53,462 nucleotides of DNA from Macrostomum lignano (taxonomy: Eukaryota): contig NIVC01004245.1 in assembly GCA_002269645.1 (NCBI GenBank), positions 1 to 53,462 of the forward strand. Direction: 5' to 3'. Below are positions 22 to 53,039 of the stretch, one piece after another. The notes beneath the pieces are model-generated. The model saw only the letters and a program-made list of their open reading frames with translations. It was not told the origin of the DNA and did not search any database. Position 1 is the first letter of the stretch. Each line of letters starts with the position of its first letter. Both the position numbers and the translations under genes were made by a program.

Positions 22-1972
22 TCAGCTCTCGACCCAAATCCGAAAGCCGTAAGCCAAGGCCAGCCAGCACAGACGAAGCCGTCAGACCGCTGCCGACCTT
101 GGCAGCGGCTGTCCCGTCATATATGGCCCAATCGTCGTTGGCGCTTTCCTCGTCGGCGCAATAGACGCTGGCCTCGGACCGACGCACAGGCGTACATCAC
201 TACATGCCCGATGTAGCTCTGCTCGTGCGTGCTGTGCAGCAGATAGCGCTGGGCCCGGCGGCGTAGACGGCGGACGTCCTCCGCTCCGTGCGACTCGTAG
301 TCGTAATTGTACAAAGCCGGAACTGGAAGTTCACAGCCGTGGTGTTCGCATCGTGAGGTTCTTGCGCGGCGTCCCGATAGCAGCGGAAGGACCGTCGGCG
401 TAGTTCAGCACAGTGTAGGGCATGCCGTCGTAGGCGACTGCCTCGCCTTTGAATTGTACCTGTCCTCGTCAGAGTTCACAACCGGCCTAGGATCGGGTTC
501 CTCGCAGGCCCCAGCCGCCAACAGTGAACACGTTGGCTGTGGTCGCCAGTCACCAACATTGAGGGTGTCTGCGCGCGTTGGTTAGCCCATTGCTCGAGTG
601 ACTGCCCTGTCCAGCTCCAGGACATCGTGCAGGGCTCGCTTGCCGTAGTTGTCATGGTGAGCGTGATCGATGCGACCAGCTTCCACGAAAAGGGCAAAGC
701 GTTGGATTGCGGGACAGAATGCGAATGGCTTTGTCCACCATCTCTGAGAGACTCGGCTCCTGATAGGTCGGGTCCATCTCGTTGTCCAACTGGTAGCGCA
801 GGTGGCTCGTGTGCGAACAGTCCCAGGACGTAGTCAGTGTTCGCCGGGTCGATCGCGTCGAACTGCGACTTAGACTCAGCGAAGGCAAAGCGCCGCATTT
901 TGCTGGACTGCAGATTTCGCCAGCGGTTGATCAGATTCACGCCGTCCTGTCGTTTGCCAGAAACTGAGGAGTTCTTGTTCGAGTAATCGATGGTACTTTC
1001 AGCAGTGGGCAAAAAGTTGGTCCGTCCACCACCAAAAATGACATTCCAATCGGCTGCGTTCGACACCAGCTGGGTGGCAATATCCGGACATTTTGTCTTG
1101 TCCGTTCCGGCAGGAAGATTGGCGTCACTTTCCCAGCTGCGGCTGGGCGAATGCGCGTACATCGCTGCCGGAGTGGCGTGCGTGATCCGCGTTGTGGTGA
1201 CGAGACCCACGGACTTTCCAGCCAGTTGGGCGTAGTGCATAAATGAATACAAATTCTTGCTGGGATCGTACGTCGTGCAGTTGCCCCTGATGACGTCCTG
1301 ATTCACTCCGATGTTTCCATCGTTCGTCTTCACTCCGCTGCCAATAGCTGTCGCCGTGGCCCCCGAGTCCGATGTCTGGAAGTCGCAGTCGTATGTCTTG
1401 GCCAGAGCAATCTGTGGGAATGTCTCGTACGATAGCTGAGCCTCCTCACCGGATCGGTTCTGCAACTGGCCCTTGTAGACTCGGCCCGCCATTGTGCTGG
1501 TCAGGCTCAGGCCGTCGCCCAGGAAGAACACGAGGTTCTTGGCCCGGCCACGCTGCAGGTTTGAAGCTGCCGCTTTCGCAGCCAGCAGGTCTGCTCGACC
1601 GCGATTCACCCACCATTGCGGCGACTCGTATGAGGGCACCGGAAAGTGACTCTCCGACTTTGGAGCCATTGCAGAATCGCAGATGTTCGGCAGCAACAGA
1701 ACCAGCGCTGCTGCGATGCCGACAGCAGTCAAGGGGCGTCGTGTCACTAAAATGGAAATGGCTGATTAAACTTACCGTGATTTTGAACTATAGTTACTCT
1801 AACGATTTTCAAAGTAGTAGTTAATCGGTCATCTCTATAGCAATAATTTTGGAGAATTAAAATGTTATACATAAATCATATAAATATAATATATAGATTA
1901 GTTACTAAGCATGTTAAACTATAATGTTATATGAAATTAAGCTAGATGCGCAGCAGACAACACGCACTTACT
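22..1972 (-). CDS. alp: Alkaline phosphatase, secreted or GPI-anchored type. The main exon spans 1746-22. The 3' half is broken by several single-base frameshifts (assembly error or pseudogenisation).
   Basis: Signal peptide MTRRPLTAVGIAAALVLLLP; AKNLVFFLGDG; active-site DSGATATA; GLVTTTRITHATPAAMYAH. Shifted frames give EPSLSEMVDKAIRILSRNP, FVEAGRIDHAHH, VTGDHS, ESHGAEDV and HEQSYIGHVVMYA. One frame ends in a hydrophobic GPI-like tail (GSGLTASSVLAALAYGFRIWVES*) with TGA at 24-22. The start ATG is formed across intron 1971-1747. Confidence 0.93.
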
Positions 1973-3606: not shown

Positions 3607-6508
3607 ATGACTTCCAAAGCGCATTATAGCTCAAATTGTAGTCCCAGAAAATTTGATGAAAAAATTGCTTTATTAAAAGCAAATGAGTCCGAGTCAAATG
3701 AAAAGTTTGATAGACTACTTTGCGAGCTAAATGTTCTTAAAGGACATGTGAGTCTTTTTGTTGTATGTGAGTCTTTTTCTTGTATTTGAATTTTTTATTT
3801 ACTTCATTGAGCCTTTGGTTATATAGCATTATTATTATTGGCTGGTAGACATGTTAAATTAATCTGTTTTGGATATTTCATGTGAAAGGCCTATGGTATA
3901 GTATTGGCATATTTCTATGTTTAAGTTAAATTAAGATAAATTTATGGATTGCTATTTGCTAGCCTAGTAGACTTAAATATCATCATTATAAATTTTATAA
4001 TATAGCTTAATAGATTTCTTTTATTCTCCAGAATAGTTAGCTACTACAATGATAAATTAAAAATTGAATTATTCATTAATTTATCTAGTATGATAAAGTA
4101 GTGGCTCCAAGCTATTGCAAAAATATTGGTTAAGAATTATATAATTCCCAATAATCTAATGCTATATAAAGTTTGTCTTCAATAAACAAAATGACTATAT
4201 AAATTAAAATTATCTAATTATAACTAACAAACTTATTAGTAAATAAATATTTTTAAATTATAACCAAGCATTGTATATTTCCAGTTAATTATTTTTGCAT
4301 ATTTTTTATTCTAACTTTTAACATTTTCAATCATATTTAGATAAGTTAAAATAAGATTTAGGACATTTTAAAGTCAATATAGTTTTAAAAACTTACAAGT
4401 GCTTAAAAGTAGCTAATGAAAAAAATAGAATTGTTAGAATTATTTTTGTAATGAGAAAATATATAATTGATGCTCATTTGTTTAGCTAAATTACTCACCT
4501 TTCCCAAACCTCTCCAATGTTGGCACAGCTTAACCCGAGCTCTCGTCGCACAGTCTCAACACCAAATGTGGCCAACAATGCTTCAGTTGGAAGTGCAGCG
4601 GCCCCAACAGATGGAGCTGCTGCTAATAATAGCAACACTGTTGTTGCCTCTGCTGGTGCCGCTGCCACTGGTGCAGCCGAGGTCAACAGCACAAGCTCGC
4701 CTGTGCCCATCGCTGCAGGTGGCTGGTACTCCACCAATGCCGCAGCTGCTGCCGCTGCCGCCGCTGCCATCGCTGGCAGCCATTTTCCAGCTAGCGGCCA
4801 CTACGGCGGCTCCAACTGCAATGTGAGCTGCACACCGCCTGCCACCCTCACCGGCTGTCCCTCCTGCCCGCTGGTTTCAGCCTCTCAGTATGCTAGCGCC
4901 GGCGCCGCAGGCTCCACTGGCTACCCTAGTGGCACCGGCGCCGGCGGCCCGATGTACACTTCTTCGACTCAGTGTACGCCGAAGCGGCGCGTACGCGACA
5001 TGGTGATGTCCCGTGTGCAGCGGTCGCATCCCTACTCACCGACTAGGGACCGCTTCTTCCCCGGCTCTCTGACTGCCGTGAACGATCAGCAGAGCTTGCA
5101 GCCGCTGCACTACCGAGCCCAGCACCACCGCCACGCGCTCCAGCATCAGCAGTCGCAGAATCAGCCAGAGTCGTCCCAGCTGCTTCTGGACGACGATTCG
5201 CAGAGGCTGCCGATTTTTCCGCAGCCGAGGCGCGCCTCGTCGGACACGAACATTGCTGAGCGGCTTCAGCGGTGCTCGCCAACGGCGGAGCAGCAGAGCA
5301 CCGACTGGCAGCATCAGCAGCACCCGCAGCCAGCCCAGCAGATCATGATGCCATTGAATCTCCAGCAGCAGCAGTTGGCGATGCAGTTCCAGCAGTATCA
5401 GCAGCCGCTGCTCCAAGATGACATGATCCGTCTGAGCCTTGGCGGCTACGGCGGCCAGTTTGGTGGTCAAACTTCCGTCAGCTGCTCCGCCTCGTACGCT
5501 GAGCAGCTGAACTCTTCCGCTGGGGGCGCCGCCATTCCGGAAATTCAGGTCAGTTGAGTGCTATATAGGAGTTTTATATGATGAACTGTTCTAACAGCTG
5601 GTGCCTTCACCAAACAGACACTTCACCAACCACAACCAGACACTTCACCAACCAGACACTTCACCAACCACCAGACACTTCACCAACCTGACACTTCACC
5701 AACCTGACACTTCACCAACCTGACACTTCACCAACCACCAGACACTTCACCAACCAGACACTTCACCAAACAGACACTTCACCAACCTGACACTTCACCA
5801 ACCAGACACTTCACCAACCAGACACTTCACCAACCGGACACTTCACCAACCGGACACTTCACCAACCGGACACTTCACCAACCGGACACTTCACCAACCA
5901 GACACTTTACCAACCTGACACTTCACCAACCTGACACTCCACCAACCTGACACTTCACCAACCAGACACTTCACCAACCTGACACTTCACCAACCTGACA
6001 CTCCACCAACCAGACACTTCACCAACCAGACACTTCACCAACCAGACACTTCACCAACCAGACACTTCACCAACCAGACACTTCACCAACCTGACACTTC
6101 ACCAACCAGACACTTCACCAACCTGACATTCCACCAACCAGACACTTCACCAACCAGACACTTCACCAACCTGACACTTCACCAACCAGACACTTCACCA
6201 GCCAGACACTTCACCAACCTGACACTCCACCAACCAGACACTTCACCAACCTGACACTCCACCAACCAGACACTTCACCAACTGACTCACCTTGAGCTTA
6301 CTAATGTGCACTGCAGGTGACTCACTCTATGTGCCAGAGTCCAACTCTGTTCTGCGGCCCCGAAGTCGCTGCCGACGTGCCCGAAGCTCTGCCAGACCAG
6401 CAGGATCAGTTGGGCCTCTTCGAAACTGACGAGGATATGAATAATGCCGGTGAAAGTGAGTACACTGAGCACACACAGTTTATTGCTAACTGGTCTGGAG
6501 GGGTTTGA
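3607..6508 (+). CDS. crtc: CREB-regulated transcription coactivator (CRTC/TORC) homolog; exons approx. 3607-3747, 4529-5548, 6317-6508
   Basis: Exon 1 SPRKFDEKIALLKANESESNEKF matches the TORC_N motif NPRKFSEKIALH. RRASSDTNI resembles the SIK/14-3-3 site RTxSDSAL. A Gln-rich middle is present. The spliced junction IPEIQ|VT matches the TORC_C start IPNIILT. Junctions are GT-AG and phase 0. The 3' end is uncertain. Confidence 0.82.
5604..6284. repeat. 16-bp minisatellite (CAGACACTTCACCAAC) filling crtc intron 2
   Basis: About 40 tandem copies with CCAGAC/CCTGAC/CCGGAC variants, ending about 30 bp before the acceptor. Confidence 0.95.
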
Positions 6509-9276: not shown

Positions 9277-9500
9277 GGGGGGTTGTAGCCTAGTGGTCAG
9301 AGCGTTGGACTCACGACTTGAAGGTCGGGGGTTCGATTCCCGATCCCACTGGAACAATTTGTGTCCTTGAGCAAGACACTTAACTCAGCATTGCTTCAGT
9401 TCACCCAGCTGTAAAATGGGTGCCAGCATTAGCTGGGGTAATTGAAAGTGTGTGTGGCGACCCCCCAGTCCTTGGACTGAACAGCCATACGCAGCCTTCA
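9277..9500 (+). mobile_element. tRNA-derived SINE
   Basis: A box TAGCCTAGTGG (9286) and B box GGTTCGATTCCC (~9330) with a degenerate cloverleaf. These are followed by GTGTCCTTGAGCAAGACACTTAAC...CACCCAGCTGTAAAATGGGT, which resembles the conserved central domains (Meta/V type) of animal SINE superfamilies. Confidence 0.8.
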
Positions 9501-10460: not shown

Positions 10461-10805
10461 GGGGCCCATCACAAGCTCGAAAAGTCAAGCTCGAAAAAAC
10501 ATATCGTCGAAAAGTCTAGCAACCACCATCACAATCTCGAATAGGGTTAGGGTTAGAACTTGTGCCTTAGGGTTAGGGTTTAGGGTTAAGTTTAGGGTTG
10601 GGGTTAGAACTTGTGCCTTAGGGTTAGGGCTTAGGGTTAAGTTTAGGGTTGGGGTTAGAACTTGTGCCTTAGGGTTAGGGTTTAGGGTTAGGCTAGGGTA
10701 CTGGTGCCTTAGGGTTAGGGTTAGAGCTTGTGCCTTTTCGAGATTGTGATGATGTTTGCTGAACTTTTCGACGATGTGATTTTTCGAGCTTATGATGGCG
10801 ACCCC
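10461..10805. mobile_element. Non-autonomous DNA transposon (MITE), GG..CC termini, 8-bp TSD, internal telomere-like TTAGGG repeats; Merlin-like
   Basis: TSD TAGCGAGG at 10453-10460 and 10806-10813. Imperfect TIRs of about 70-80 bp (GGGGCCCATCACAAGCTCGAAAA...CACAATCTCGAA versus TTCGAGATTGTG...TTTTCGAGCTTATGATGGCGACCCC). Interior is TTAGGG-rich with a repeated AGAACTTGTGCC. Confidence 0.85.
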
Positions 10806-29900: not shown

Positions 29901-32900
29901 AACTACTGTAATAATTCCTGAACTACAATAATGATTCCTGAACTACTGTAATAATTCCTGAACTACAATAATGATTTCTGAACTACAGTGATGATTCCTA
30001 AACTACAGAAATAATTCCTAAACTACAGTGATGATTCCTGAACTACTGTAATAATTCCTGAACTACAGTAATGATTCCTGAACTACTGTAATGATTCCTG
30101 AACTACAGTAATGATTCCTGAACTACTGTAATGATTCCTGAACTACTGTAATGATTCCTGAACTACTGTAATGATTCCTGAACTACAGTAATGATTCCTG
30201 AACTACTGTAATGATTCCTGAACTACAGTAATGATTCCTGAACTACTGTAATGATTCCTGAACTACAGTAATGATTCCTGAACTACTGTAATGATTCCTG
30301 AACTTCCTGAAGTTTTGATGGACAAATGAACAATATGGATTATTCTCCCTATTAATTTTAGCTAGACTTTCAACCCCCTGCACTTCAACTCGCTCTCCTC
30401 TTTGCAGGTGCATCAGTTCTGGCCGCTGGTGGAAATCTCGTGCAGCCAGGACCTGCGCTTTTTCCTCTGCAGCATGTACGTGCCAATCTGCATGCACAAC
30501 TACGACAGGCACCTGCCGGCCTGCCGCTCCGTCTGCCTGCGCGCCAAGAAGGGCTGCGCGCCGCTGATGCGACAGTACGGGTTCAGCTGGCCAGAAAAGA
30601 TGGACTGCTCTAAACTGCCAGGTGAGATCTATCTACCGATTGAGCAGATCTATCTACCGATTGAGCAGATCTACCTACCGATTGAGCAGATCTACCTACC
30701 GATTCAGCAGATCTATCTACCGATTGAGCAGATCTATCTACCGATTGAGCAGATCTATCTACCGATTCAGCAGATCTATCTACCGATTGAGCAGATCTAC
30801 CTACCGATTGAGTAGATCTATCTGCCGATTGAGCAGATCTATCTACCGATTGAGTAGATCTATCTGCCGATTGAGCAGATCTATCTACCGATTGAGTAGA
30901 TCTATCTGCCGATTGAGCAGATCTATCTACCGATTGAGTAGATCTATCTACCGATTGAGTAGATCTATCTGGCAATTGAGCAGATCTATCTGCCGATTGA
31001 GTAGATCTATCTGGCGATTGAGCAGATCTATCTACCGATTGAGCAGATCTATCTGCCGATTGGTCAGATCTATCTACTAATTGATCAGATCTATCTACCA
31101 ATAAGTCTATGTTTAGCTACAGCAGACATAACAAGCAAGGAGACAAAGGTTTTTGGCATGCCGCTGTCTCATTAGCATACAAGTATAGAATAGAGATGGT
31201 GAGGGAAATTTCTGGAAACAAAAATTTCATACTTCATTCCGTCGTCAACACGTCTATTGATGTCCGCAGCCCCCGGCCAGCCGGTCCCACCTCTTTGCCG
31301 CTTTGAAATGAATAAATAAGCTGCAGGCCCCATTGTGTCTACTTTTTCAAGAAGGGACCAACTGGAGGAGCTGAAGAGGGAGAATAGGTGGGCAGCGCAT
31401 CATCCCAAGAATTTTTTGTCGCCGACACAGCAAAACGCTTGCATTGTCCTCATCGGGCAACAAAAAATGAGTTTCTTTTTAAAAAAAGTAAAAAATGCCG
31501 AGTCCACAGCGGCAGCCACTTCCCCTTTCCTCTTAGCTTTGAGCCGGCACAATGGGGTCGCGTCGGCCCATTGAGATACAAAAATAGAAAGACTAGTTTT
31601 TTAGAGGCACCCCAAGCCTCCGCAGCAGGTACTCCACCAGCCAAGTCTTTGGGAGCTTTCAGCCTGACTCTCCTTTTGAATGGGAAATTTTTGAGCTTCA
31701 CTTTTACAGACCTTTTATAGGGAGGGGAGGTTGTTCGAGATTACTCATCTGCGACTAACTTGATTCTATCAGCCACTGAGAATAACACTCGACCTTTTTA
31801 CGCAAATATTGATCCATTGGAAAGGTCTTTGACTCAACTAGACATAAGCCTGACTCATTGGAGAGAACCATGCCCCATTGGAGACAACCCTGACCCGCCG
31901 GTGATAACCATGACCCATTGGAGAGAACCCTGACCCATTGGTGATAACCATGACCCATTGGAGAGAACCCTGACCCGCCGGAGAGAACCATGACCCATTG
32001 GAGAGAACCCTGACCCATTGGTGATAACCACGACCCATTGGAGACAACCCTGACCCGCCGGTGATAACCATGACCCATTGGAGAGAACCCTGACCCATTG
32101 GTGATAACCATGACCCATTGGAGAGAACCCTGACCCGCCGGAGAGAACCATGACCCATTGGAGAGAACCCTGACCTATTGGTGATAACCATGACCCATTG
32201 GAGAGAACCCTGACCCGCCGGTGATAACCATGACCCATTGGAGAGAACCCTGACCCATTGGTGATAACCATGACCCAACAGCAGTAAGACAACACCACCC
32301 CAACAGTGTCCTGTCTCTCCACCGCAGACTACGGCGATCCTGACACCCTGTGCATGGACGTCAACCACACGAGCACCTCGCAGCCGGTCACCACGCTGCC
32401 ACCAGACACGGACACCTCATACGGCTCGGCGCCGGCCTCCTGCGAGTGCCGCTGCCAGGCGCCGCTGGTGCAGCTGACGGAGAACGAGGCACACTACAAC
32501 AAGGTGTACACCGCCGGCCTACCGAACTGCGCCATGCCCTGCGAGGGGCTGTTCTTCTCCGAGAAGGATCGTGACCGGCAGTTCGCGAGCGTCTGGATCG
32601 GCATGTGGTCGATATTGTGCGCCGTCAGTTCCACCGTTACTGTGCTCACCTTTCTAATTAACTCTAAGCGGTTCAACTATCCAGAGCGGCCCATTGTGAT
32701 GCTGTCTGCCTGTTACGTCATGGTGTCGGCTGGTTACATTGTCCGCCTGGCCGTGGGACCGCAGACCATCGCCTGCGACGGTCGGGTGCTGCGCTACGGA
32801 TCGTCTGGACCGTGGCTGTGCACCGTGGTGTTCCTGCTGACCTACCTGTTCGGCATGGCCAGCTGCGTGTGGTGGGTCATGCTGTGCGTGGCCTGGTTCC

Positions 32901-34272
32901 TGGCGGCCGGGCTCAAGTGGGGCAGCGAGGCCATCGCCAAGTACAGCGAGGTGAGACTGCAGCGCTGCGGCTGCGCTTGGCGATGCTTTGGCTGGGAATT
33001 AGGAGATAGGATTAGATGGGATGGGATAGGATGAGATGGGTTGAGATGAGATGGGATGGGATGGGATGGGATGGGATGAGATGGGTTGAGATGAGATAGG
33101 ATGGGATGGGATGGGATAGAAAGGATGAGAGGAGAGGAGAGAGGAGAGGAGAGGAGAGGAGAGGAGAGGAGAGGAGAGGAGAGGATAGGAGAGGAGAGGA
33201 GAGGAGAGGAGAGGAGAGGAGAGGAGAGGAGAGGAGAGGAGAGGAGAGGAGAGGAGAGGAGAGGAGAGGAGAGGAGAGGAGAGGAGAGGAGAGGAGAGGA
33301 GAGGAGAGGAGAGGAGAGGAGAGGAGAGGTGAGGAGAGGAGAGGCAAATGATAGCAGATGGCAGTTTTCTATTCTCAAAAATTCACACAAAGTAGTAATA
33401 CATTTTTTTTACCTTGCAGTTGACAAACCAATAATATTCAGTCAAAAAGTATCGATTACTCAAAGCTCCACTCCCACCTCCCGCCGCAGGTGTTCCACTG
33501 CATCGCCTGGGTGCTGCCAATCGTGAAGTTTATCCTGGTCCTGACCTTCTCCCTAGTTGACGGCGACCCGATCTCCGGAATCTGCTCTGTGGGCAACACG
33601 AACCTCACCGCAATGCGCCTGTTCGTGCTGCTGCCCCTGGTGACATACCTGCTCATCGGCAGCGTCTTCCTGCTCACCGGCTTCGTGGCCCTGTTCCGCA
33701 TCCGATCGGTCATCAAGCAGCAGGCCAGCGCCAAGACCTACAAGCTGGAGAAGCTGATGATCCGCATCGGGATCTTCTCCATCCTGTACACCCTGCCAGC
33801 CTCCGTGGTCATCGCCTGCCATTTCTACGAGTCGCAGATGCGTGAGCGCTGGCTGCAGGACAAGGCCTGCCGCTGCCCGGGGGAGAAGCCCGCCGCGGAG
33901 CCGGAGTACGGCGTGTTCATGCTGCGCCAGTTCATGCAGCTCGCCGTTGGCATCACCAGCGGGGTGTGGGTCTGGTCCGGCAAGACTCTGCACACCTGGC
34001 GTCAGTTTCTTGGCCGCCTGTTCTGCTGCACCGGCCGCGGCGGCGGCGGTGGCGGCGGTGGCGGCGGCGGAGCCTACAGCCGCCCGTCAGCTGGCGGTCA
34101 TCACTTCGTCCTTGGCGGCGGCGCTGCGGCGCAGGCGCAGGCGGCGGCGTCGGCTGCTGCTGTCAGCCTGACTGGGGACCCGCGGTCGCACTACAAGTTC
34201 AGCCAGGCCCCGGGGCAGCCGCCGCTGCCGCTGCTGCCGCAGTCGGCTGGCAACCAGATGTCTCACGTCTGA
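26921..34272 (+). CDS. fz5/8: Frizzled-5/8 Wnt receptor; exons ~26921-27169, 30408-30621, 32328-32950, 33490-34272; start exon not located
   Basis: [37 protein letters not shown]|[28 protein letters not shown]; [15 protein letters not shown]; [17 protein letters not shown]|VFHCIAW; [16 protein letters not shown]; Dvl motif KTLHTW; PDZ-type C-terminus MSHV as in FZD5. Junction phases are compatible. Confidence 0.96.
27180..27765. repeat. 38-bp minisatellite (CTGAGGCATCAGGGAGGGCCTGAGTATAGCGGCTCCCT) in a frizzled intron
   Basis: About 15 copies beginning about 10 bp after the donor at 27170. Confidence 0.95.
28860..29122. repeat. ACACACATGCTTAG-type 16-18-bp array
   Basis: Direct reading of the sequence. 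Confidence 0.9.
29801..30305. repeat. 20-bp minisatellite (AACTAC[T/A]GTAATGATTCCTG) with alternating variants
   Basis: About 25 copies; T/A alternation gives a 40-bp higher-order pattern. Confidence 0.95.
30624..31100. repeat. 21-bp minisatellite (GAGCAGATCTATCTACCGATT) starting at the frizzled donor
   Basis: About 22 copies; the first copy overlaps GTGAG at 30622. Confidence 0.95.
31858..32277. repeat. 20-bp array built from modular halves (GGAGAGAACC/GGTGATAACC plus CTGACCCATT/ATGACCCATT/CTGACCCGCC)
   Basis: About 21 units ending about 50 bp before the acceptor at 32327. Confidence 0.93.
33010..33345. repeat. Pentamer arrays (GGATG)n then (GGAGA)n in a frizzled intron
   Basis: Direct reading of the sequence. 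Confidence 0.95.
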
Positions 34273-38736: not shown

Positions 38737-46488
<7,752 letters not shown>

Positions 46489-46821
46489 TCCGAGCTTTTA
46501 ACTGGCACTCGAATTGAACTGGCTGCTCCAATACAATTAATGCTTGTCTGTGATCCGCTTTTGATCGTTCATTCTCATTTGTCTCTTATTGCTTTGGTAA
46601 CCGTGCTAGTGTTAATATACACGAGTATGTAGCTCTTATAATCGTTCTGATGATGAATCAAAGATTTAAAATCGATTTGTCAACATTCCGTTTATTATTT
46701 GATAAAACATTAGGTAAATTTAAAAGTTCACCCTTTCACCTGCGAAATCATTGTGTCATAAACTCAACTCTATTGTGGGCCTGTAGAAGTCACTGACTTC
46801 GGAGCCCTTCGCAAGATTCAT

Positions 46822-47877
46822 TCACTCGCGAGTTCTTGAATCCTCTCTGTGCCCATTGCGTCTCTTGCCCGGTTTAAATCGACCCTGCTCATTATGTCTG
46901 TTTCCATGCCTGTAGTGTCTATTTCGGTCTTGATGTCCGCGACGTCCCTTTCTACGTCTTTCGTGTTCGCGACGTCCCTCTCTGCGCCTGCCGTGTTCGC
47001 GACGTCCCTTTCCGCGTATGTCTTGTTCGCGACGTCCCTCGCCACGTCTGCCGTGTTCGCGACGTCCCTTTCTGCGTCTGCCGCGTTCGCGACGTCCCTC
47101 TCCGCGTCTGCCGTGTTCGCGACGACGTTCCTCTTCGCGTCTGCCATGTTTGCGACGTCCCTCTCCGCGTCTTCCGTGTTCGCGACGTCCCTTTCCACGT
47201 CTGTCATGTTCGCGACGTCCCTCTCCTCGTCTGCCGCGTTCGCGACGTCCCTTTCCACGTCTGTCATGTTCACGACGTCCCTTTCCTCGTCTGCCGTGTT
47301 CGCGACGTTCTTTTCCACGTCTGCTGTGTTGGCGATGTCCTTTTCCGCGTCTGCCGTGTTCGCGACGTCCCTCTCCGCGTTTGCCATGTTCGCGACGTCC
47401 CTTTCCACGTCTGTCATGTTCGCGACGTCCCTCTCCTCGTCTGCCGTGTTCGCGACGTTCTTTTCCACGTCTGCCGTGTTGGCGACGTCCCTCTCCGCGT
47501 CTGCCGTGTTCGCGACGTCCCTCTCCGCGTCTGCCGTGTTCGCGACGTTCTTCTTCGCGTCTGCCGTGTTCGCGACGTCCCTTTCGTGATGTCTCGCCAT
47601 CAAACTTCCAGTTTTTAAAGCCGGGCCTTTTCTCTGCCCCTTTTCCAACCCTAAACTCGTCGCTCTTTTCCACTGAGTCCGAGCGCCTCGGTCGAGAGAT
47701 TCCAAAACGATTGCTGAATTCTTTCTCGAAGTCTTCGTCCCACCTTGATGCCGACCCTGAGTCAGCCGTCCACTGGCTGCTGATATCGTCAAATGCACTG
47801 TCGATTGCAACAGCAGCAGCTGCTGCTGCTGCGACACTCAGCAGTAAAACGGACGAAATTGTCTTTAAAAATCTCAT
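46822..47877 (-). CDS. Secreted Arg/Gly/Glu/His-rich tandem-repeat protein (~351 aa), unknown family
   Basis: ATG at 47877; signal-like [24 protein letters not shown]; about 21 decapeptide repeats GEGRREHGRR. Repeat variants are synonymous in this frame (CGC/CGT/CGA, CAC/CAT). The ORF is uninterrupted. Confidence 0.75.
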   Translation of the reverse strand: MRFLKTISSVLLLSVAAAAAAAVAIDSAFDDISSQWTADSGSASRWDEDFEKEFSNRFGISRPRRSDSVEKSDEFRVGKGAEKRPGFKNWKFDGETSRKGRREHGRREEERREHGRRGEGRREHGRRGEGRRQHGRRGKERREHGRRGEGRREHDRRGKGRREHGKRGEGRREHGRRGKGHRQHSRRGKERREHGRRGKGRREHDRRGKGRRERGRRGEGRREHDRRGKGRREHGRRGEGRRKHGRREEERRREHGRRGEGRRERGRRRKGRREHGRRGEGRREQDIRGKGRREHGRRREGRREHERRRKGRRGHQDRNRHYRHGNRHNEQGRFKPGKRRNGHREDSRTRE

Positions 47878-48344
47878 CTTTTCGATGTTAAACAGTTTCA
47901 AATGCTGACAAAGCTCTCTTGCAATTAAAACTTTGACAATGCTGAGCCGGCTGAAATTCGTCAGGTTTTTATTTTTAGGTTAAGATTTTGCTTTGGATTT
48001 TTCATTGCCGAACAGGTGATTTTTGCAACGACCTCCGAAATCTGAACGTGACGCAAGTGCAGTAATCATAGCTTTGCAGAGGTGAAACAAACAGAGAAAA
48101 GTTTCAAAAAACTTTGTTGAAAGGGAAAGCAATGAGAAATGAATTCACAGCTGGTTATGCGAATTTCAGACTCAAGCTACAATAAATTTTATGGCTAGTT
48201 TGCGTGACATTGTGTGCCATCGGGACACGAATTAAAAGCTTTCGTTCAACCATTTTGGCAAGACAAAAACAGGTTTTAAAACACAGCTCACAAGTGCGCT
48301 AAAAACAACTTCTTTCCGACACAAAAAAGTTGAAACCAAACAGC

Positions 48345-49135
48345 ATGGCACAGACTGTCCTGCAGAGACCTCACCTGTGTGTTTATCTTATCATCCTGTG
48401 CATTGCCAGCTGTGTCAACTCGGCTCCGTTAAGTAGGATCTCCGGCTCAGCTGGTGATGGTTCTGACATCCGCAACGCAGCAAATGGTTTACAACAACAT
48501 GTTAAACCAGCTAAACAGCTCCACGTGCTTGTAAATAATCGCACTGTGATTTCAGCAGCTTCAGCCAACAAGAATGTGCATCGCCCAGCTGAGGCCCCTG
48601 CTCTGCCAGCTAAAGCCCCTGCTCTGCCAGCTAAAGCCCCTGCTCTGCCAGCTAAGGCCCCTGCTCTGCCAGCTAAGGCCCCTGCTCTGCCAGCTAAAGC
48701 CCTTGCTCTGCCAGCTAAAGCCCCTGCTCTGCCAGCTAAAGCCCCTGCTCTGCCAGCTAAGGCCCCTGCTCTGCCAGCTAAGGCCCCTGCTCTGCCAGCT
48801 CCCCTGCTCTGCCAGCTAAAGCCCCTGCTCTGCCAGCTAAAGCCCCTGCTCTGCCAGCTAAGGCCCCTGCTCTGCCAGCTAAAGCCCCTGCTCTGCCAGC
48901 TAAAGCCCCTGCTCTGCCAGCTAAAGCCCCTGCTCTGCCAGCTAAAGCCCCTGCTCTGCCAGCTAAAGCCCCTGCTCTGCCAGCTAAAGCCCCTGCTCTA
49001 CCAGCCGAAGCCACTGCTCCACCAGCTGCTGCTGCACGGCCACCAGAAAAGACCATTATTCGACCTTCTGAAGTCATAGCTAAGCAATTAGCTCAAACAA
49101 AGACTATGGATCATACGAATAAAAACAAAAAGTGA
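48345..49135 (+). CDS. Secreted Ala/Pro/Lys repeat protein (APALPAK)n, with one frameshift inside the array
   Basis: Signal-like MAQTVLQRPHLCVYLIILCIASCVNSA; about 20 x 21-bp units with synonymous AAA/AAG variation. A 4-bp loss near 48800 shifts the frame. The restored frame ends ...TKTMDHTNKNKK* (TGA 49133-49135). Confidence 0.7.
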
Positions 49136-49159
49136 TAAAATACCTCAGGTCGAATTCCG

Positions 49160-49530
49160 TCATACTGACCACAGATCTCGTCGCCGACATTACCAACGCC
49201 CTGAGTACAGATCTCGTCGCCGACATTACCAGCGCCCTGAGTACAGATCTCGTCGCCGACATTACCAACGCCCTGAGTACAGATCACGTCGACGACATTA
49301 CCAACGCCCTGAGTACAGATCTGGTCACCGACATCACGAACGAAGCCCTGATTACAGATCTCGGCACCGACATCACGAACGAAGCCCTGATTACAGATCT
49401 CGTCACCGACATCACGAACGAAGCCCTGATTACAGATCTCGTCACCGACATCACGAACGAAGCCCTGATTACAGATCACACCGTCAACATTACCGGCGTC
49501 CTGATTACAGCCCTCGTCACCGACATGACT
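49160..49530. repeat. 36/39-bp tandem repeat, open on + (TDLVADITNALS / TDLVTDITNEALI) and on - (ICNQGFVRDVGDE)
   Basis: About 10 units; unit lengths are multiples of 3. Confidence 0.85.
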
Positions 49531-50554
49531 AACACTTGGTGTCTTTAGAATGCATCAATGCCTTTTACATTGACATAATCGATCTTGGTGTAACTTTGCG
49601 TTGAACCCATTATTTTTCTATGCAAAATCAGTTATGAGTTCTACTGTGTCTAATATATTAGATTTTGCTAGTAAGAAGGTTTCGAAGTTTTATTGATTTT
49701 TCTTGGTTCGTTGCTTCAAAAACTATGAATTAGATTAAGCCTGCAAAAACATTTCATTTCTTCATTGGCACACTGGATACCTTTGATTTCTCTGTAATGT
49801 CTCCCTGCATCTGGCTCCATAATTCAGTTCACGAAAAGTTTTGTTTAAATTGAATGCTGATTTACCGAAATTAAAATGCTAATCGATTTTTTTCGCCTCA
49901 GATTTGATAAGGGGGTAGGCCACTCAGGCATGTATACTTAGCAAAACAGCTTTCTACTTTCAGTTCAGTAGGAATGAAAAATACAGATGGCATTTAGAAA
50001 AATAAAGGCGGCTGAAATGACTTTGATAAGCTTAGAAGCCGAAGCTTGCAGGCGTAAACAGCTTGCTAATTGGTTCAGCAATAATGTACATTGGCCAGTC
50101 CACTGAAATGTACATGGCAGCTTTAGGCTGGAACAATCAGGGAAGGCAATAAAAATTGGGTGGCGGGGCAGGGGTAGAGGTTCTGTTTGAGGGTTTAAGC
50201 TGGGGCGGGGGGGTTAAAAGCCAATAAATGAGCCTGGTCTTTAAAAGTACATTAAATACTTCAGTTTAACTTAGCTCGTACTACGAGAATACTGAACTAA
50301 AAGTAGGTTGGGCGCAAATGTGCTGAGTGGCCCCATCTATAGTTATTCTAGTTATCTGTGCACCAGACTTCCGGTCTCTTGCAGCCTTAAAAATGAAACA
50401 ACGTCCACTAACAATGTAACACGGGGTCGCGTTCGTGTCTGGTCACTTTGTCACTAAGCTGGTGCAGCGAAGCGAAGCGATTCGAGCGAAGCAAAACCAT
50501 CCTCATCTGTCAAATCGAGTTAGCATTTAAACTCCTTCATCCCTATCGTGTTCG

Positions 50555-51525
50555 ATAGTAGTGTAGTGTAGTACATGTGGTGTAGTATCATGTGGTGTAT
50601 TTTCATGTGGTGTAGTACATGTGGTGTAGTTTCATGTGGTGTAGTTCTCTGTGGTGTAGTTTCATGTGGTGTAGTTTCATGTGGTGTAGTTCTCTGTGGT
50701 GTAGTTCTCTGTGGTGTAGTTTCATGTGGTGTAGTTTCATGTGGTGTAGTTTCATGTGGTGTAGTTTCATGTGGTGTAGTTCTCTGTGGTGTAGTTTCAT
50801 GTGGTGTAGTATCATGTGGTGTAGTTTCATGTGGTGTAGTCTCATGTGTGTAGTTCTCTGTGGTGTAGTTTCATGTGGTGTAGTATCATGTGGTGTAGTT
50901 TCATGTGGTGTAGTTTCATGTGGTGTAGTTCTCTGTGGTGTAGTTTCATGTGGTGTAGTATCATGTGGTGTAGTTTCATGTGGTGTAGTCTCATGTGGTG
51001 TAGTTCTCTGTGGTGGTTTCATGTGGTGTAGTATCATGTGGTGTAGTTTCATGTGTGTAGTTTCATGTGGTGTAGTTCTCTGTGGTGTAGTTTCATGTGG
51101 TGTAGTATCATGTGGTGTAGTTTCATGTGGTGTAGTTTCATGTGGTTTAGTTTCATGTGGTGTAGTCCTCTGTGGTGTAGTTTCATGTGGTGTAGTCCTC
51201 TGTGGTGTAGTTTCATGTGGTGTAGTTTCATGTGGTGTAGTCCTCTGTGGTGTAGTTTCATGTGGTGCAGTTTCATGTGGTGTAGTTCATGTGGTGTAGT
51301 TTCATGTGGTGTATTTCATGTGGTTTAGTTTCATGTGGTGTAGTCCTCTGTGGTGTAGTTTCATGTGGTGTAGTCCTCTGTGGTGTAGTTTCATGTGGTG
51401 TAGTTTCATGTGGTGTAGTCCTCTGTGTGTAGTTTCAATGTGGTGCAGGTTTCATGTGGTGTAGTTCTCTGTGGTGTAGTTTCATGTGGTGCAGTTTCAT
51501 GTGGTGAGTCCTCTGTGGTGTAATC
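50555..51525. repeat. 15-bp minisatellite (GTGGTGTAGTTTCAT / GTGGTGTAGTTCTCT)
   Basis: About 60 copies. Confidence 0.95.
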
Positions 51526-52048
51526 TACTCTAATCTACTCTACACACACCTGAGCTATTTACTTTACACCTGAGCTATCTACTCTACACCTGAGACATCT
51601 ACTCTACATCTGAGATATCTACTTCTGTCGTTTCCTTTATTAACGAAGAAAAGACGAAAGAAAGAAATTCTATAGGAATAAATGAATCTACATTTATCTC
51701 AATATCTCTCAAACTCCAAGCCTCAGACTGGACACACGTAGGCAAATTTTATTTAGCAATAATGATCCCAACACCAAAATAATAGCTGATCGATATCTAT
51801 ATAGTCACTGAGCAGTGAACACCTTTGAACTGCATCTCTGCATTTTGTCTCTCAGATGGACCTCCTTGGAAGAATTGCTGCTTCTTATGTTTCGAATGAA
51901 AAAAGCTCATTGCGATGAAAGCGGTCAAAGCGGTCACTGCGGTCATAACGCTCCTCTCGCGAATGGTGCGGGGCTCCTTCCTTCCCTTGGCAGGCGGCGG
52001 CCATGATGATGGCGCCAGCCGACGCGCCTGGGCTCTTTTCCATGCCAT

Positions 52049-52543
52049 TTATGTCGGTTCGTTTGTTTTGCTCGTGGTAGTTTCCGGTGGCGGAGTGGTA
52101 GTTTCCTCTGGCGATGCGGTAGTTTCCTCCGGCGAAGCGGTAGTTTCCTCCGGTGAAGCGGTAGTTTCCTCCGGCGAAGCGGTAGTTTCCTCCGGTGAAG
52201 CGGTAATTTCCTCCGTCGAAGCGGTAGTTTCCTCCGTGAAGCGGTAGTTTCCTCCGGCGAAGCGGTAGTTTCCTCCGGCGAAGCGGTAGTTTCCTCTGTC
52301 GAAGCGGTAGTTTCCTCCGGCGAAGCGGCAGTTTCCTCCGGCGAAGCGGTAGTTTCCTCCGGCGAAGCGGTAGTTTCCTCCGGCGAAGCGGTAGTTTCCT
52401 CCGGCGAAGCGGTAGTTTCCTCAGTCGCTTTCGGGCGCCCCGTTTTGAGCAGGCAAAGCGTCCAAAGCAGCTGAGGTGGCAAAGCTGAGCAGACAGACAA
52501 GCAGCAGACACTGCAGTAGAAGAGATCGGGTTGGAGAAGCCAT
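52049..52543 (-). CDS. Secreted acidic mucin-like protein (EETTASP)n, with two apparent single-base frameshifts
   Basis: ATG at 52543 gives MASPTRSLLLQCLLLVCLLSFATSA. Removing one C from a CCC near 52438 joins this to about 16 EETTASP repeats. A second shift lies near 52236. Variants TCG/TCA, GCT/GCA and CCG/CCA are synonymous only in this frame. The protein ends ...PPPETTTSKTNEPT* at 52049. Confidence 0.65.
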
Positions 52544-53039
52544 ATTCAGATAAAAAAACAAAGGCTTAAATTTGGCAGAAAGTCAAACAGTCAACTAAGT
52601 CTGAGAGACTTTCCAGTCAGACTTATATAGATGCGATTTGAAAACACCGGAAAAAACTCGTCTCCACCTAAGTAAAACAAAGTTCCTCCGCTACGTCTGT
52701 TACCGAATTCGTCACGATTTTTTTCAAATAAATTTTTTTATAATCGACTTGCAAGTATAACAAAAATTTGTGTCCCTGTGTGAAAAAAAAGTTTAAGAAG
52801 ATCATTAACCACCTGGCACTAAAAAATTGAACTGGATTTTTGTCGAATTCCATATGGAATTAATTTTTTATTTTGGCATTTTAAATCATGTTTTTTATAA
52901 TACAAAGATACTTTTTAAGCACTACTGCTAGTAACAAAGTAAGATTTAATTCGGCGAAAGGTTGTTTAAATCTTGAAAGCCTAAGTACACTGTGATATAG
53001 AACCCACACACTGTAATATATAACAACACATTGTATAAT

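What the first reader, a model, noticed from the sequence alone, without database searches (positions are those of the whole stretch)
46822..52543. Cluster of three orphan secreted tandem-repeat proteins with contrasting charge: candidate mucus, glue or gland-secretion locus
Seen: within 6 kb lie three apparently single-exon genes, each with a signal-like N-terminus and a short perfect repeat. These are an Arg-rich decapeptide (GEGRREHGRR), an Ala/Pro/Lys heptapeptide (APALPAK) possibly extended by a Thr/Asp-rich block, and an acidic Thr/Ser heptapeptide (EETTASP). The reading frames are supported by synonymous variation among repeat copies. Known: flatworm temporary adhesion in Macrostomum uses a Lys/Arg-rich repeat protein together with a glycosylated partner, and oppositely charged disordered proteins can coacervate. 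Inference: these may be co-expressed components of one secreted material (adhesive, mucus, rhabdite, egg capsule or antimicrobial). I do not recognise any of them.
Basis: partly seen in the sequence, partly recalled or inferred. Interest (0 to 1): 0.72.

Follow-up and report, generated by a model that had tools for sequence, protein, structure and literature searches.

The report
Three possible secreted repeat-protein genes
Three short tandem DNA repeats at the end of this animal genome window each follow a signal-peptide-like start, so they may be young genes for secreted repeat proteins, but only one is an intact reading frame and none has outside support.

Summary
The three arrays and their signal-like starts are real, but the description is too generous. 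Only gene 1 (46822-47877, minus) is one unbroken ORF: signal-like start, about 22 copies of G(E/K)GRREHGRR, then a stop. In gene 2 a 4-nt deletion (48800|48801) moves APALPAK out of the starting frame. In gene 3 the signal-like ORF stops at TGA 52421-52423, right at the array; EETTASP regains that frame only after a 20-nt unit (52235-52254).

The repeats are 83-94% identical, not perfect. Synonymous variation does not pick out the claimed frames. The window is 37% tandem repeat, with 3n-period arrays inside introns.

For real genes: the three strongest signal-like starts among 184 testable ATG ORFs all point into these arrays. GC also rises at the ORF borders, and the unique N-terminal parts of genes 1 and 2 show G/purine enrichment at codon position 1.

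Against: GC3 is 0.24-0.53, versus 0.83 in confirmed exons here, and no homologue, domain or transcript was found.

My reading is young lineage-specific secreted repeat-protein genes (about 0.5) versus non-coding minisatellite ORFs (about 0.35). The adhesive or coacervate idea is untested. Interest is modest.

The parts
46822..47877 (-). Gene 1: intact ATG-to-stop ORF of 351 aa. It has a signal-like start, an acidic unique segment of about 80 aa, about 22 copies of G(E/K)GRREHGRR and a 38-aa basic tail. Mature pI is 11.85, with 33% Arg.
47806..47877 (-). Gene 1 signal-like segment [24 protein letters not shown]. Its Ala run is encoded by a (GCA)4(GCT)4 simple repeat.
46934..47585 (-). Array 1: 30-nt minisatellite, 21.6 copies, 83% matches. 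Its only indel is an extra CGT at 47125-47127. Five of six frames are open.
46691..46696 (-). AATAAA on the minus strand, 126 nt after the gene 1 stop
47878..48344 (.). AT-rich spacer of 467 bp (GC 0.38) between the divergent ATGs of genes 1 and 2. It holds only weak TATA-like runs and a 10-bp inverted repeat, CGAATTTCAG, that is not significant.
48345..49079 (+). Gene 2 ORF as assembled (244 aa): signal-like start, 58-aa unique segment, APALPAK x10, then the frame-shifted PLLCQLK x10 and a stop.
48585..49027 (+). Array 2: 21-nt minisatellite, 21.3 copies, 94% matches. It contains one 17-nt unit (4-nt deletion between 48800 and 48801).
48801..49135 (+). Continuation of the APALPAK frame after the deletion: APALPAK x10, then the tail EATAPPAAAARPPEKTIIRPSEVIAKQLAQTKTMDHTNKNKK and TGA 49133-49135. 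AATAAA lies at 49118-49123.
49171..49533 (.). Array 4: 36/39-nt minisatellite (TDLVADITNALS in one plus frame). It has no ATG or signal-like start and is separated from gene 2 by stops. It is not part of the gene 2 ORF.
50562..51522 (.). Array 5: 15-nt minisatellite, 64.6 copies, 8% indels. It reads TTPHE (Thr/Pro-rich) in one minus frame, but the frame drifts constantly and there is no start.
52421..52543 (-). Gene 3 signal-like ORF, MASPTRSLLLQCLLLVCLLSFATSAALDALPAQNGAPESD, ending at TGA 52421-52423 at the array edge. The h-region is encoded by a degenerate (CTGY)n stretch.
52076..52422 (-). Array 3: 21-nt minisatellite, 16.6 copies, 92% matches. EETTASP is at offset +1 from the ATG for the first 9 units. 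A 20-nt unit at 52235-52254 brings it back to the ATG frame. All three minus frames are open.
52049..52234 (-). Last EETTASP units and the tail EETTTPPPETTTSKTNEPT in the frame of the gene 3 ATG, with the stop at 52049-52051
52623..52629 (-). TATATAA, 86 nt upstream of the gene 3 ATG

Best explanation
The 46.8-52.6 kb stretch most likely holds a small cluster of lineage-specific, intron-less genes for secreted, intrinsically disordered tandem-repeat proteins. The repeat domains are coding minisatellites that grow and shrink by replication slippage or unequal exchange.

- Gene 1 would give a strongly cationic Arg/His/Gly/Glu-rich polypeptide.
- Gene 2 would give a cationic Ala/Pro/Lys-rich one.
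- Gene 3 would give an anionic Thr/Ser/Pro/Glu-rich, mucin-like one that is probably O-glycosylated.

Each would enter the ER through a cleaved N-terminal signal peptide and be released as an extracellular polyelectrolyte (mucus, matrix or gland secretion). The atypical codon usage suggests the genes are evolutionarily young.

In this sequence only gene 1 is intact. The frame breaks in genes 2 and 3 are either base-calling or assembly indels or recent disabling mutations.

Shown here: the arrays, the ORF structure, the signal-like starts and the composition steps. Inferred: transcription, translation, secretion, glycosylation and any joint function.
For: (1) Signal-like starts. Of 184 ATG ORFs with at least 40 open codons outside repeats, 6 pass a signal-peptide filter. 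The three with the longest uncharged h-regions (about 20 aa) each sit directly 5' of one of the three arrays and point into it.

(2) Gene 1 is intact from ATG to stop, and its one array indel is 3 nt.

(3) The unique N-terminal part of gene 2 is open only in the claimed frame (0 stops against 2-6 in the other five frames). It shows purine and G enrichment at codon position 1 (0.64/0.38), like confirmed exons. Gene 1 gives 0.67/0.38.

(4) GC rises from 0.31-0.40 in the flanks to 0.48-0.59 in the unique ORF parts, at the ORF borders of all three.

(5) All 6 arrays of at least 200 bp in the last 7 kb have periods divisible by 3, against 7 of 28 elsewhere (Fisher p=0.0013).

(6) There is a TATATAA at -86 of gene 3, an AATAAA 126 nt after the gene 1 stop and another at the end of gene 2, and an A at -3 of all three ATGs.

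(7) The frame breaks need not be biological. A conserved alkaline phosphatase in the same window has at least 6 frameshifts without introns, mostly single-base and mostly at short base runs, all within 430-815 nt of the window start. When stitched together, it aligns end to end with human TNAP (E=1e-94). The single-base unit shortening in gene 3 (CCGG to CCG), and the run-rich stretch (AAAA, GGGG, CCC) where its other shift must lie, are the same kind of context.
Against: - Codon usage. Six confirmed exons in this window have GC3 of 0.70-0.91 (pooled 0.83) and positive codon scores in leave-one-out tests. The candidate segments have GC3 of 0.24-0.53 and negative scores in every frame.
- Genes 2 and 3 are not continuous ORFs.
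- Array 1 is open in 5 of 6 frames, and the unique N-terminal part of gene 1 is open in 2.
- Substitutions among repeat copies show no frame-specific excess of synonymous changes.
- 37% of the window is tandem repeat, and 3n-period arrays also lie in the introns of the Frizzled and DUF4551 genes.
- Long upstream ORF extensions also occur at other arrays.
- The h-regions of genes 1 and 3 are partly encoded by simple repeats, which are common in this genome. A signal-like ORF also crosses array 3 on the opposite strand (51915-52247).
- No homologue, domain or record was found anywhere. The protein databases are poor in animal proteins, though: a Frizzled exon found a single hit.
Confidence: 0.5

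Rival explanations
1. These are non-coding intergenic minisatellites. The long ORFs arise because 3n-period, stop-free units stay open when repeated. The signal-like starts are by-products of Leu/Cys/Val/Ala-coding simple-sequence remnants ((CTGY)n and (GCN)n) beside them. Nothing is translated.
For: - The window has 48 arrays covering 36.7% of its length, including 3n-period arrays in introns.
- Three to five frames are open in arrays 1 and 3.
- Arrays 2 and 3 carry frame-breaking indels of 4 nt and 1 nt.
- There is no frame-specific excess of synonymous changes.
- GC3 and codon scores are unlike real exons 0.3-7 kb away.
- A signal-like ORF also reads array 3 on the other strand.
- There are no homologues or domains.
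- Upstream ORF extensions of similar length occur at other arrays.
Against: - Three of three arrays have the window's best signal-like starts, correctly placed and oriented.
- The gene 2 N-terminal segment is open in only the claimed frame and shows coding-like codon-position asymmetry.
- GC steps coincide with the ORF borders.
- All 6 arrays in this 7 kb have 3n periods, against 25% elsewhere.
- Gene 1 is fully intact, and its only indel is in frame.
Confidence: 0.35
2. The cluster is partly decayed. Gene 1 is functional, but genes 2 and 3, and possibly arrays 4 and 5, are genuine pseudogene relics of former repeat-protein genes.
For: - The 4-nt deletion in array 2 is not a typical single-base error at a base run.
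- Array 5 has a 3n period and a Thr/Pro-rich frame, but 8% indels and no start.
- Array 4 has 36/39-nt units without a start.
- The 3n periods across the whole region would fit a coding past.
Against: The window demonstrably carries indels of the kind sequencing errors produce in a conserved gene near its other end, so real and artefactual frame breaks cannot be told apart here. Beyond the single indels, genes 2 and 3 show no decay such as stops in the repeat frame.
Confidence: 0.1
3. Gene 1 is a multi-copy peptide precursor (prohormone-like). Arg-Arg pairs every five residues would be cut by convertases, and the Gly before each pair would be used for amidation.
For: It has a signal-like start and a strictly periodic ...RR-EHG-RR-G(E/K)G-RR... 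pattern, formally dibasic sites each preceded by Gly. One copy reads RR-QHG-RR.
Against: The released products would be dipeptide amides (EH-NH2, GE-NH2 or GK-NH2), shorter than any known bioactive neuropeptide. There are no acidic spacers and no Pfam or homology support. The repeat also behaves like a young DNA minisatellite (83% nucleotide identity).
Confidence: 0.03

Closest known systems
Mucin-type PTS (Pro/Thr/Ser) tandem-repeat secreted glycoproteins
   Same: Conceptual gene 3 has a signal-like start followed by about 16 heptads of EETTASP (53% S+T+P, pI 4.05). The repeats are encoded by a length-variable coding minisatellite, as in many mucins (general knowledge).
   Different: The signal segment and the repeats are not in one frame as assembled. 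There are no Cys-rich, vWD or SEA domains. The protein is very short (about 157 aa). Glycosylation is untested.
Macrostomum lignano adhesion proteins Mlig-ap1 and Mlig-ap2 (PMC6410801)
   Same: A strongly cationic K/R-rich secreted protein is paired with a glycosylated partner, and neither has homologues outside the lineage. Gene 1 is 33% Arg with pI 11.85.
   Different: Mlig-ap1 and Mlig-ap2 are 5,407 and 14,794 aa long and carry vWD, EGF, C-type lectin, TIL, LDL-receptor and TSP-1 domains. The ORFs here are 157-351 aa with no domain. Direct sequence comparison was not possible, and the source organism is unverified.
Drosophila salivary glue (Sgs) gene cluster at 68C (from memory)
   Same: Several small genes for secreted proteins lie within about 5 kb. 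One pair is transcribed divergently from a short spacer, and one member has Thr-rich tandem repeats. Repeat number evolves fast.
   Different: This is an analogy only, with no sequence relationship tested. The Sgs genes have proven transcripts, hormone control and typical codon usage. None of that is shown here.
Sandcastle-worm cement proteins (Pc1/Pc2 basic, Pc3 acidic) and other oppositely charged coacervating secretions (from memory)
   Same: Short-repeat, disordered, oppositely charged secreted polypeptides.
   Different: Pc3 gets its charge from phosphoserine, and Pc1/2 are Gly/Lys/Tyr(DOPA)-rich. The ORFs here have almost no Tyr. Co-expression and mixing behaviour are untested.
Ordinary non-coding minisatellites of this genome
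   Same: Their period range (15-39 nt), copy identity (83-94%) and indel behaviour match the other 45 arrays in the window, some of which lie in introns.
   Different: Only these three are preceded by strong signal-like ATG ORFs and bounded by GC steps.

Membership tests
Mucin-type PTS-repeat secreted protein (gene 3) | N-terminal signal peptide continuous with the repeat domain | tested here: not met
   A signal-like start is present, but its frame stops at TGA 52421-52423. EETTASP lies in another frame for the first 9 units.
Mucin-type PTS-repeat secreted protein (gene 3) | Tandem repeats dominated by Pro/Thr/Ser | tested here: met
   EETTASP heptads; S+T+P = 0.53 of the conceptual mature protein.
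Mucin-type PTS-repeat secreted protein (gene 3) | Dense O-glycosylation | not testable with these tools
   Needs glycoproteomics or lectin staining.
Macrostomum adhesion proteins Mlig-ap1/ap2 | Very large multidomain architecture (vWD, EGF, C-type lectin, TIL, TSP-1) | tested here: not met
   The ORFs are 157-351 aa, and no Pfam domain reaches its threshold. Architecture taken from PMC6410801.
Macrostomum adhesion proteins Mlig-ap1/ap2 | Extremely cationic K/R-rich regions | tested here: inconclusive
   Gene 1 is 33% Arg with pI 11.85, so it is similar in kind. The motif is different, and the reported pI for the Mlig-ap1 K/R regions is above 14.
Macrostomum adhesion proteins Mlig-ap1/ap2 | Expression in adhesive gland cells and presence in footprints | not testable with these tools
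   No expression or proteome data are available, and the organism is not identified.
Non-coding minisatellite | Indels not constrained to multiples of three | tested here: inconclusive
   Array 1 has one 3-nt indel. Array 2 has one 4-nt indel and array 3 one 1-nt indel. The sequence has demonstrable indel errors elsewhere.
Non-coding minisatellite | No frame-specific excess of synonymous substitutions among copies | tested here: met
   Array 1: 27/42 in the claimed frame against 30/39 in an antisense frame. Arrays 2 and 3 have too few sites and give equal or better scores in other frames.
Non-coding minisatellite | No gene signals in the unique flanks | tested here: not met
   Signal-like ATG ORFs, GC steps, a coding-like codon-position pattern in the N-terminal parts of genes 1 and 2, and TATA and poly(A) motifs.
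Protein-coding gene with the codon usage of this genome | GC3-rich codon usage as in confirmed local exons | tested here: not met
   GC3 is 0.24-0.53 against 0.70-0.91, and codon log-odds are negative in all frames.
Multi-copy neuropeptide/prohormone precursor (gene 1) | Peptide units of biologically plausible length between dibasic sites | tested here: not met
   The units between RR pairs are tripeptides (EHG, GEG, GKG), which would yield dipeptide amides.
   No such Pfam hits, and no second copy of any unique flank in the window.

The most novel reading that the evidence does not exclude
The three ORFs are young genes born from minisatellite expansion next to simple-sequence stretches that happen to encode signal peptides. 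Their oppositely charged products (two polycations and one mucin-like polyanion) are secreted together from one gland cell type and form a charge-driven material such as an adhesive, a coacervate or a capsule.
Probability: 0.07. Interest if true: 0.65.

Novelty: new member of a known kind. Interest (0 to 1): 0.3.

Why it matters
If they are real, these would be three more lineage-restricted secreted low-complexity proteins. That class is common in invertebrate gland secretions and hard to annotate, because repeats, missing homologues and odd codon usage defeat gene finders.

The locus could also show how coding minisatellites and simple-sequence-derived signal peptides build new secreted proteins. 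It would offer short cationic and anionic repeat peptides for materials work.

If they are not real, the case is a useful caution. In a genome that is more than a third tandem repeat, 3n-period arrays readily produce long ORFs that look like proteins.

Tried and rejected
Searches that found nothing:
- Word-indexed homology search with gene 1. It hit 8000 low-complexity candidates and nothing significant.
- Exhaustive HMMER of a composite of all unique N- and C-terminal parts against 1.84 billion representatives. The only hit was a spurious Ala/Pro-rich match to a bacterial-type repeat protein.
- Exact-product look-ups for four ORF versions.
- Two metagenome scans.
- Pfam on whole and unique parts. 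Only sub-threshold hits to signal or propeptide regions, and no transposon domains.
- Literature search for the repeat peptides.

Attempts to identify the organism failed. The neighbouring DUF4551 exon found nothing. A Frizzled exon found one 57%-identical Logan protein from run ERR9463512, which is not mentioned in any searchable paper. This also shows that the protein collections are poor in animal sequences, so the absence of hits says little.

Tests with no significant result:
- Shared promoter motifs. CGAATTTCAG occurs twice in the gene 1-gene 2 spacer, and TGACGAATT lies upstream of genes 1 and 3, but shuffles give equal or longer shared words in 28% of trials.
- Synonymous versus non-synonymous differences in all six frames for the three arrays had no discriminating power.
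- The length of the upstream ORF extension puts genes 1 and 2 in the upper tail (5th and 9th of 97), but they are not unique there.

Ideas rejected:
- Joining array 4 to gene 2, because stops intervene in every frame.
- Splicing as a rescue for the frame breaks. The array 2 unit contains no GT, and there is no GT at the gene 3 junction (sequence).

Full report
**Context**

The window is animal genomic DNA. Pfam and PDB searches identify four genes:
- a tissue-nonspecific-type alkaline phosphatase (minus strand, ORF 476-1747);
- a pyridine-nucleotide-disulphide oxidoreductase (13.3-16.4 kb);
- a Frizzled receptor (exons near 30.4, 32.4-33.0 and 33.5-34.05 kb);
- a DUF4551 (C12orf56-like) gene whose last exon ends at 46488.

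The finding therefore lies in the 7 kb beyond the last recognisable gene.

Tandem Repeats Finder gives 48 arrays covering 36.7% of the window. Many fill the introns of these genes, and some of those have periods divisible by three: 21 nt in a Frizzled intron, and 21 and 18 nt in DUF4551 introns. In this setting, a long ORF through a 3n-period array is not evidence of a gene.

I could not identify the organism. The flatworm attribution is unverified, although the repeat load fits what is reported for Macrostomum lignano (PMC5730564).

**What is in the sequence**

Gene 1 (46822-47877, minus) is a complete 351-aa ORF:
- [24 protein letters not shown];
- an acidic unique segment of about 80 aa;
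- 22 units of G(E/K)GRREHGRR, encoded by a 30-nt array of 83% identity;
- a basic tail.

Its only indel is an in-frame CGT.

Gene 2 starts at ATG 48345 with MAQTVLQRPHLCVYLIILCIASCVNS and a 58-aa unique segment, then ten APALPAK units. A 17-nt unit (a 4-nt deletion between 48800 and 48801) then shifts the ORF, so that as assembled it reads PLLCQLK x10 and stops at 49077-49079. The APALPAK frame continues separately through ten more units and a 42-aa tail to TGA 49133-49135.

Gene 3 starts at ATG 52543 with MASPTRSLLLQCLLLVCLLSFATSAA..., but that frame ends at TGA 52421-52423, exactly at the edge of the array. EETTASP sits at offset +1 for nine units. A 20-nt unit (52235-52254) brings the remaining units into the ATG frame, ending at 52049-52051.

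The "Thr/Asp-rich block" is a separate 36/39-nt array (49171-49533), cut off from gene 2 by stops in every frame.

The repeats are not perfect.

**The claimed support from synonymous variation**

I classed every difference from the unit consensus as synonymous or non-synonymous in all six frames.
- Array 1 gives 27/42 in the claimed frame and 30/39 in an antisense frame. Differences by codon position are 21/19/29.
- Array 2 has five variable sites. Three are synonymous in the APALPAK frame and equally so in an antisense frame.
- Array 3 gives 3/5 in the EETTASP frame and 5/3 in another.

The claim has no statistical support.

**Evidence that these are more than accidental ORFs**

- *Signal-like starts.* A crude signal-peptide filter (positive n-region, at least 10 uncharged hydrophobic residues, small residues at -3/-1) passes 6 of 184 ATG ORFs outside repeats. 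Three are the candidates, and they have by far the longest h-regions. One of the others is a Frizzled transmembrane helix.
- *Gene 2 N-terminus.* The unique part has no stop in the claimed frame and 2-6 in the other five.
- *Codon position 1.* The unique parts of genes 1 and 2 show purine and G enrichment at position 1 (0.64-0.67 / 0.38) only in the claimed frame, as confirmed exons do.
- *GC steps.* GC steps up from 0.31-0.40 to 0.48-0.59 at the ORF borders.
- *Array periods.* All six arrays of at least 200 bp in the last 7 kb have 3n periods, against 7 of 28 elsewhere (Fisher p=0.0013). The region boundary was chosen after the fact.
- *Promoter and poly(A) motifs.* A TATATAA lies 86 nt upstream of the gene 3 ATG. 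AATAAA lies 126 nt after the gene 1 stop and at the end of gene 2.

**Evidence against**

- *Codon usage.* Confirmed exons in this window are strongly GC3-rich (0.70-0.91; pooled 0.83) and score positive in leave-one-out codon tests. Every candidate segment has GC3 of 0.24-0.53 and scores negative in all frames. If they are genes, they do not share the codon usage of neighbours a few hundred bases away, which points to very young genes or to no genes.
- *Open frames.* Arrays 1 and 3 are open in five and three frames. The unique N-terminal part of gene 1 is open in two.
- *Simple-repeat origin of the h-regions.* The gene 1 h-region includes an Ala run from (GCA)4(GCT)4. The gene 3 h-region comes from a degenerate (CTGY)n stretch, the commonest microsatellite type in this window.
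- *A known false positive.* A weaker signal-like ORF crosses array 3 on the other strand (51915-52247), which shows that the filter can be fooled.
- *ORF extension.* Upstream ORF extensions as long as those of genes 1 and 2 occur at other arrays, mostly where they abut real exons or other arrays.

**How much weight the frame breaks deserve**

The alkaline phosphatase gene offers a calibration. tblastn with human TNAP gives contiguous HSPs in frames -2 (1543-815), -3 (801-703) and -1 (698-555) with no intervening DNA, and further shifts can be seen by eye. Stitching the frames gives a protein that aligns to TNAP residues 53-418 in a single stretch (E=1e-94), with the catalytic motifs intact.

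All six or more shifts fall within positions 430-815 of the window, and none falls in the preceding 729 nt. Most are single-base changes at short base runs.

That pattern looks like consensus errors near the end of a long-read contig rather than pseudogene decay. I infer this; it is not proven.

In gene 3, the 20-nt unit is a CCGG-to-CCG contraction, and the stretch between the signal-like segment and the array, where the other shift must lie, is rich in short base runs (AAAA, GGGG, CCC). Both sit 0.9-1.4 kb from the other end of the window. The 4-nt deletion in gene 2 is less typical of such errors. The breaks therefore weaken the gene reading for genes 2 and 3 but do not kill it.

**External evidence**

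There is none. Homology searches, an exhaustive HMMER scan of the unique parts, exact-product look-ups, two metagenome scans, Pfam and a literature search for the peptides all came back empty or spurious.

This is weak evidence. The neighbouring DUF4551 exon found nothing and a Frizzled exon found a single 57%-identical hit, so the collections hold few animal proteins.

**Interpretation**

I put about 0.5 on a cluster of young, lineage-specific genes for secreted disordered repeat proteins built on coding minisatellites. On conceptual translations the mature products are:
- gene 1: net charge +67, pI 11.85;
- gene 2: net charge +25 to +28, pI 10.3-11.0;
- gene 3: net charge -31, pI 4.05, 53% S+T+P.

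I put about 0.35 on non-coding minisatellites with fortuitous ORFs, about 0.1 on a partly decayed cluster, and a few percent on a peptide-precursor reading of gene 1.

Nothing here speaks to co-expression or to a joint material, and shared upstream words are at chance level.

They are at most a functional analogy. Many flatworm gland products are likewise secreted (PMC5977470).

**Verdict**

The finding is partly confirmed and of modest interest. If real, it is a new member of a familiar class. The decisive data are transcripts, accurate resequencing and orthologous loci, none of which these tools can reach.

Noticed in passing
window 430-815 (minus strand), within the alkaline phosphatase gene 476-1747: A well conserved TNAP-like alkaline phosphatase changes reading frame at least six times without introns, mostly by single bases at short base runs, and only in the part nearest the window start. 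The stitched protein aligns to human TNAP 53-418 at E=1e-94. This suggests consensus indel errors near a contig end, or else a very young pseudogene.
   Followed up: yes
whole window; e.g. 30625-31099, 31849-32277, 33003-33344 (Frizzled introns) and 39482-45811 (DUF4551 introns): 48 tandem arrays cover 36.7% of the window. The introns of conserved genes are largely filled with micro- and minisatellites: (CTGT)n, (CTGC)n, (ATCT)n, (ATAG)n and units of 16-84 nt.
   Followed up: partly
window 10542-10724: An interstitial telomere-like tract, made of TTAGGG/TTAGGGT units embedded in a 51-nt higher-order repeat.
   Followed up: no
window 9279-9348 (+): Rfam tRNA match just above threshold (30.9 bits against 29) that ARAGORN does not call. 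It may be a tRNA-derived repeat or a pseudogene.
   Followed up: no
window 50562-51522: A 15-nt array of about 65 copies with 8% indels. In one minus-strand frame it reads a Thr/Pro-rich pentapeptide (TTPHE). It has a 3n period like every other long array in the last 7 kb, but no start codon or stable frame. It may be a relic of a further repeat-protein gene.
   Followed up: partly
window 51915-52247 (+): A second, weaker signal-like ORF (MKAVKAVTAVITLLS...) reads array 3 on the opposite strand as VVSSGEA repeats. It is a concrete example of how easily such ORFs arise here.
   Followed up: partly
window 47951-47960 (-) and 48160-48169 (+): The only two exact copies of CGAATTTCAG in the window form an inverted pair in the spacer between genes 1 and 2. 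Each is in the sense orientation of the gene it precedes. The pair is not significant against shuffles.
   Followed up: yes
window 4517-5557 (+): A 346-aa Ala/Gln/Ser-rich ORF with no Pfam match, lying between the alkaline phosphatase gene and a 16-nt array. It may be an exon of an unidentified low-complexity (transcription-factor-like) gene.
   Followed up: no
confirmed exons across the window (e.g. 32426-32980, 33490-34044, 46246-46488): Confirmed coding exons have a very high GC3 (0.70-0.91), while unique non-coding DNA is 31-40% GC. This contrast is a strong compositional marker for telling exons from background in this genome.
   Followed up: yes
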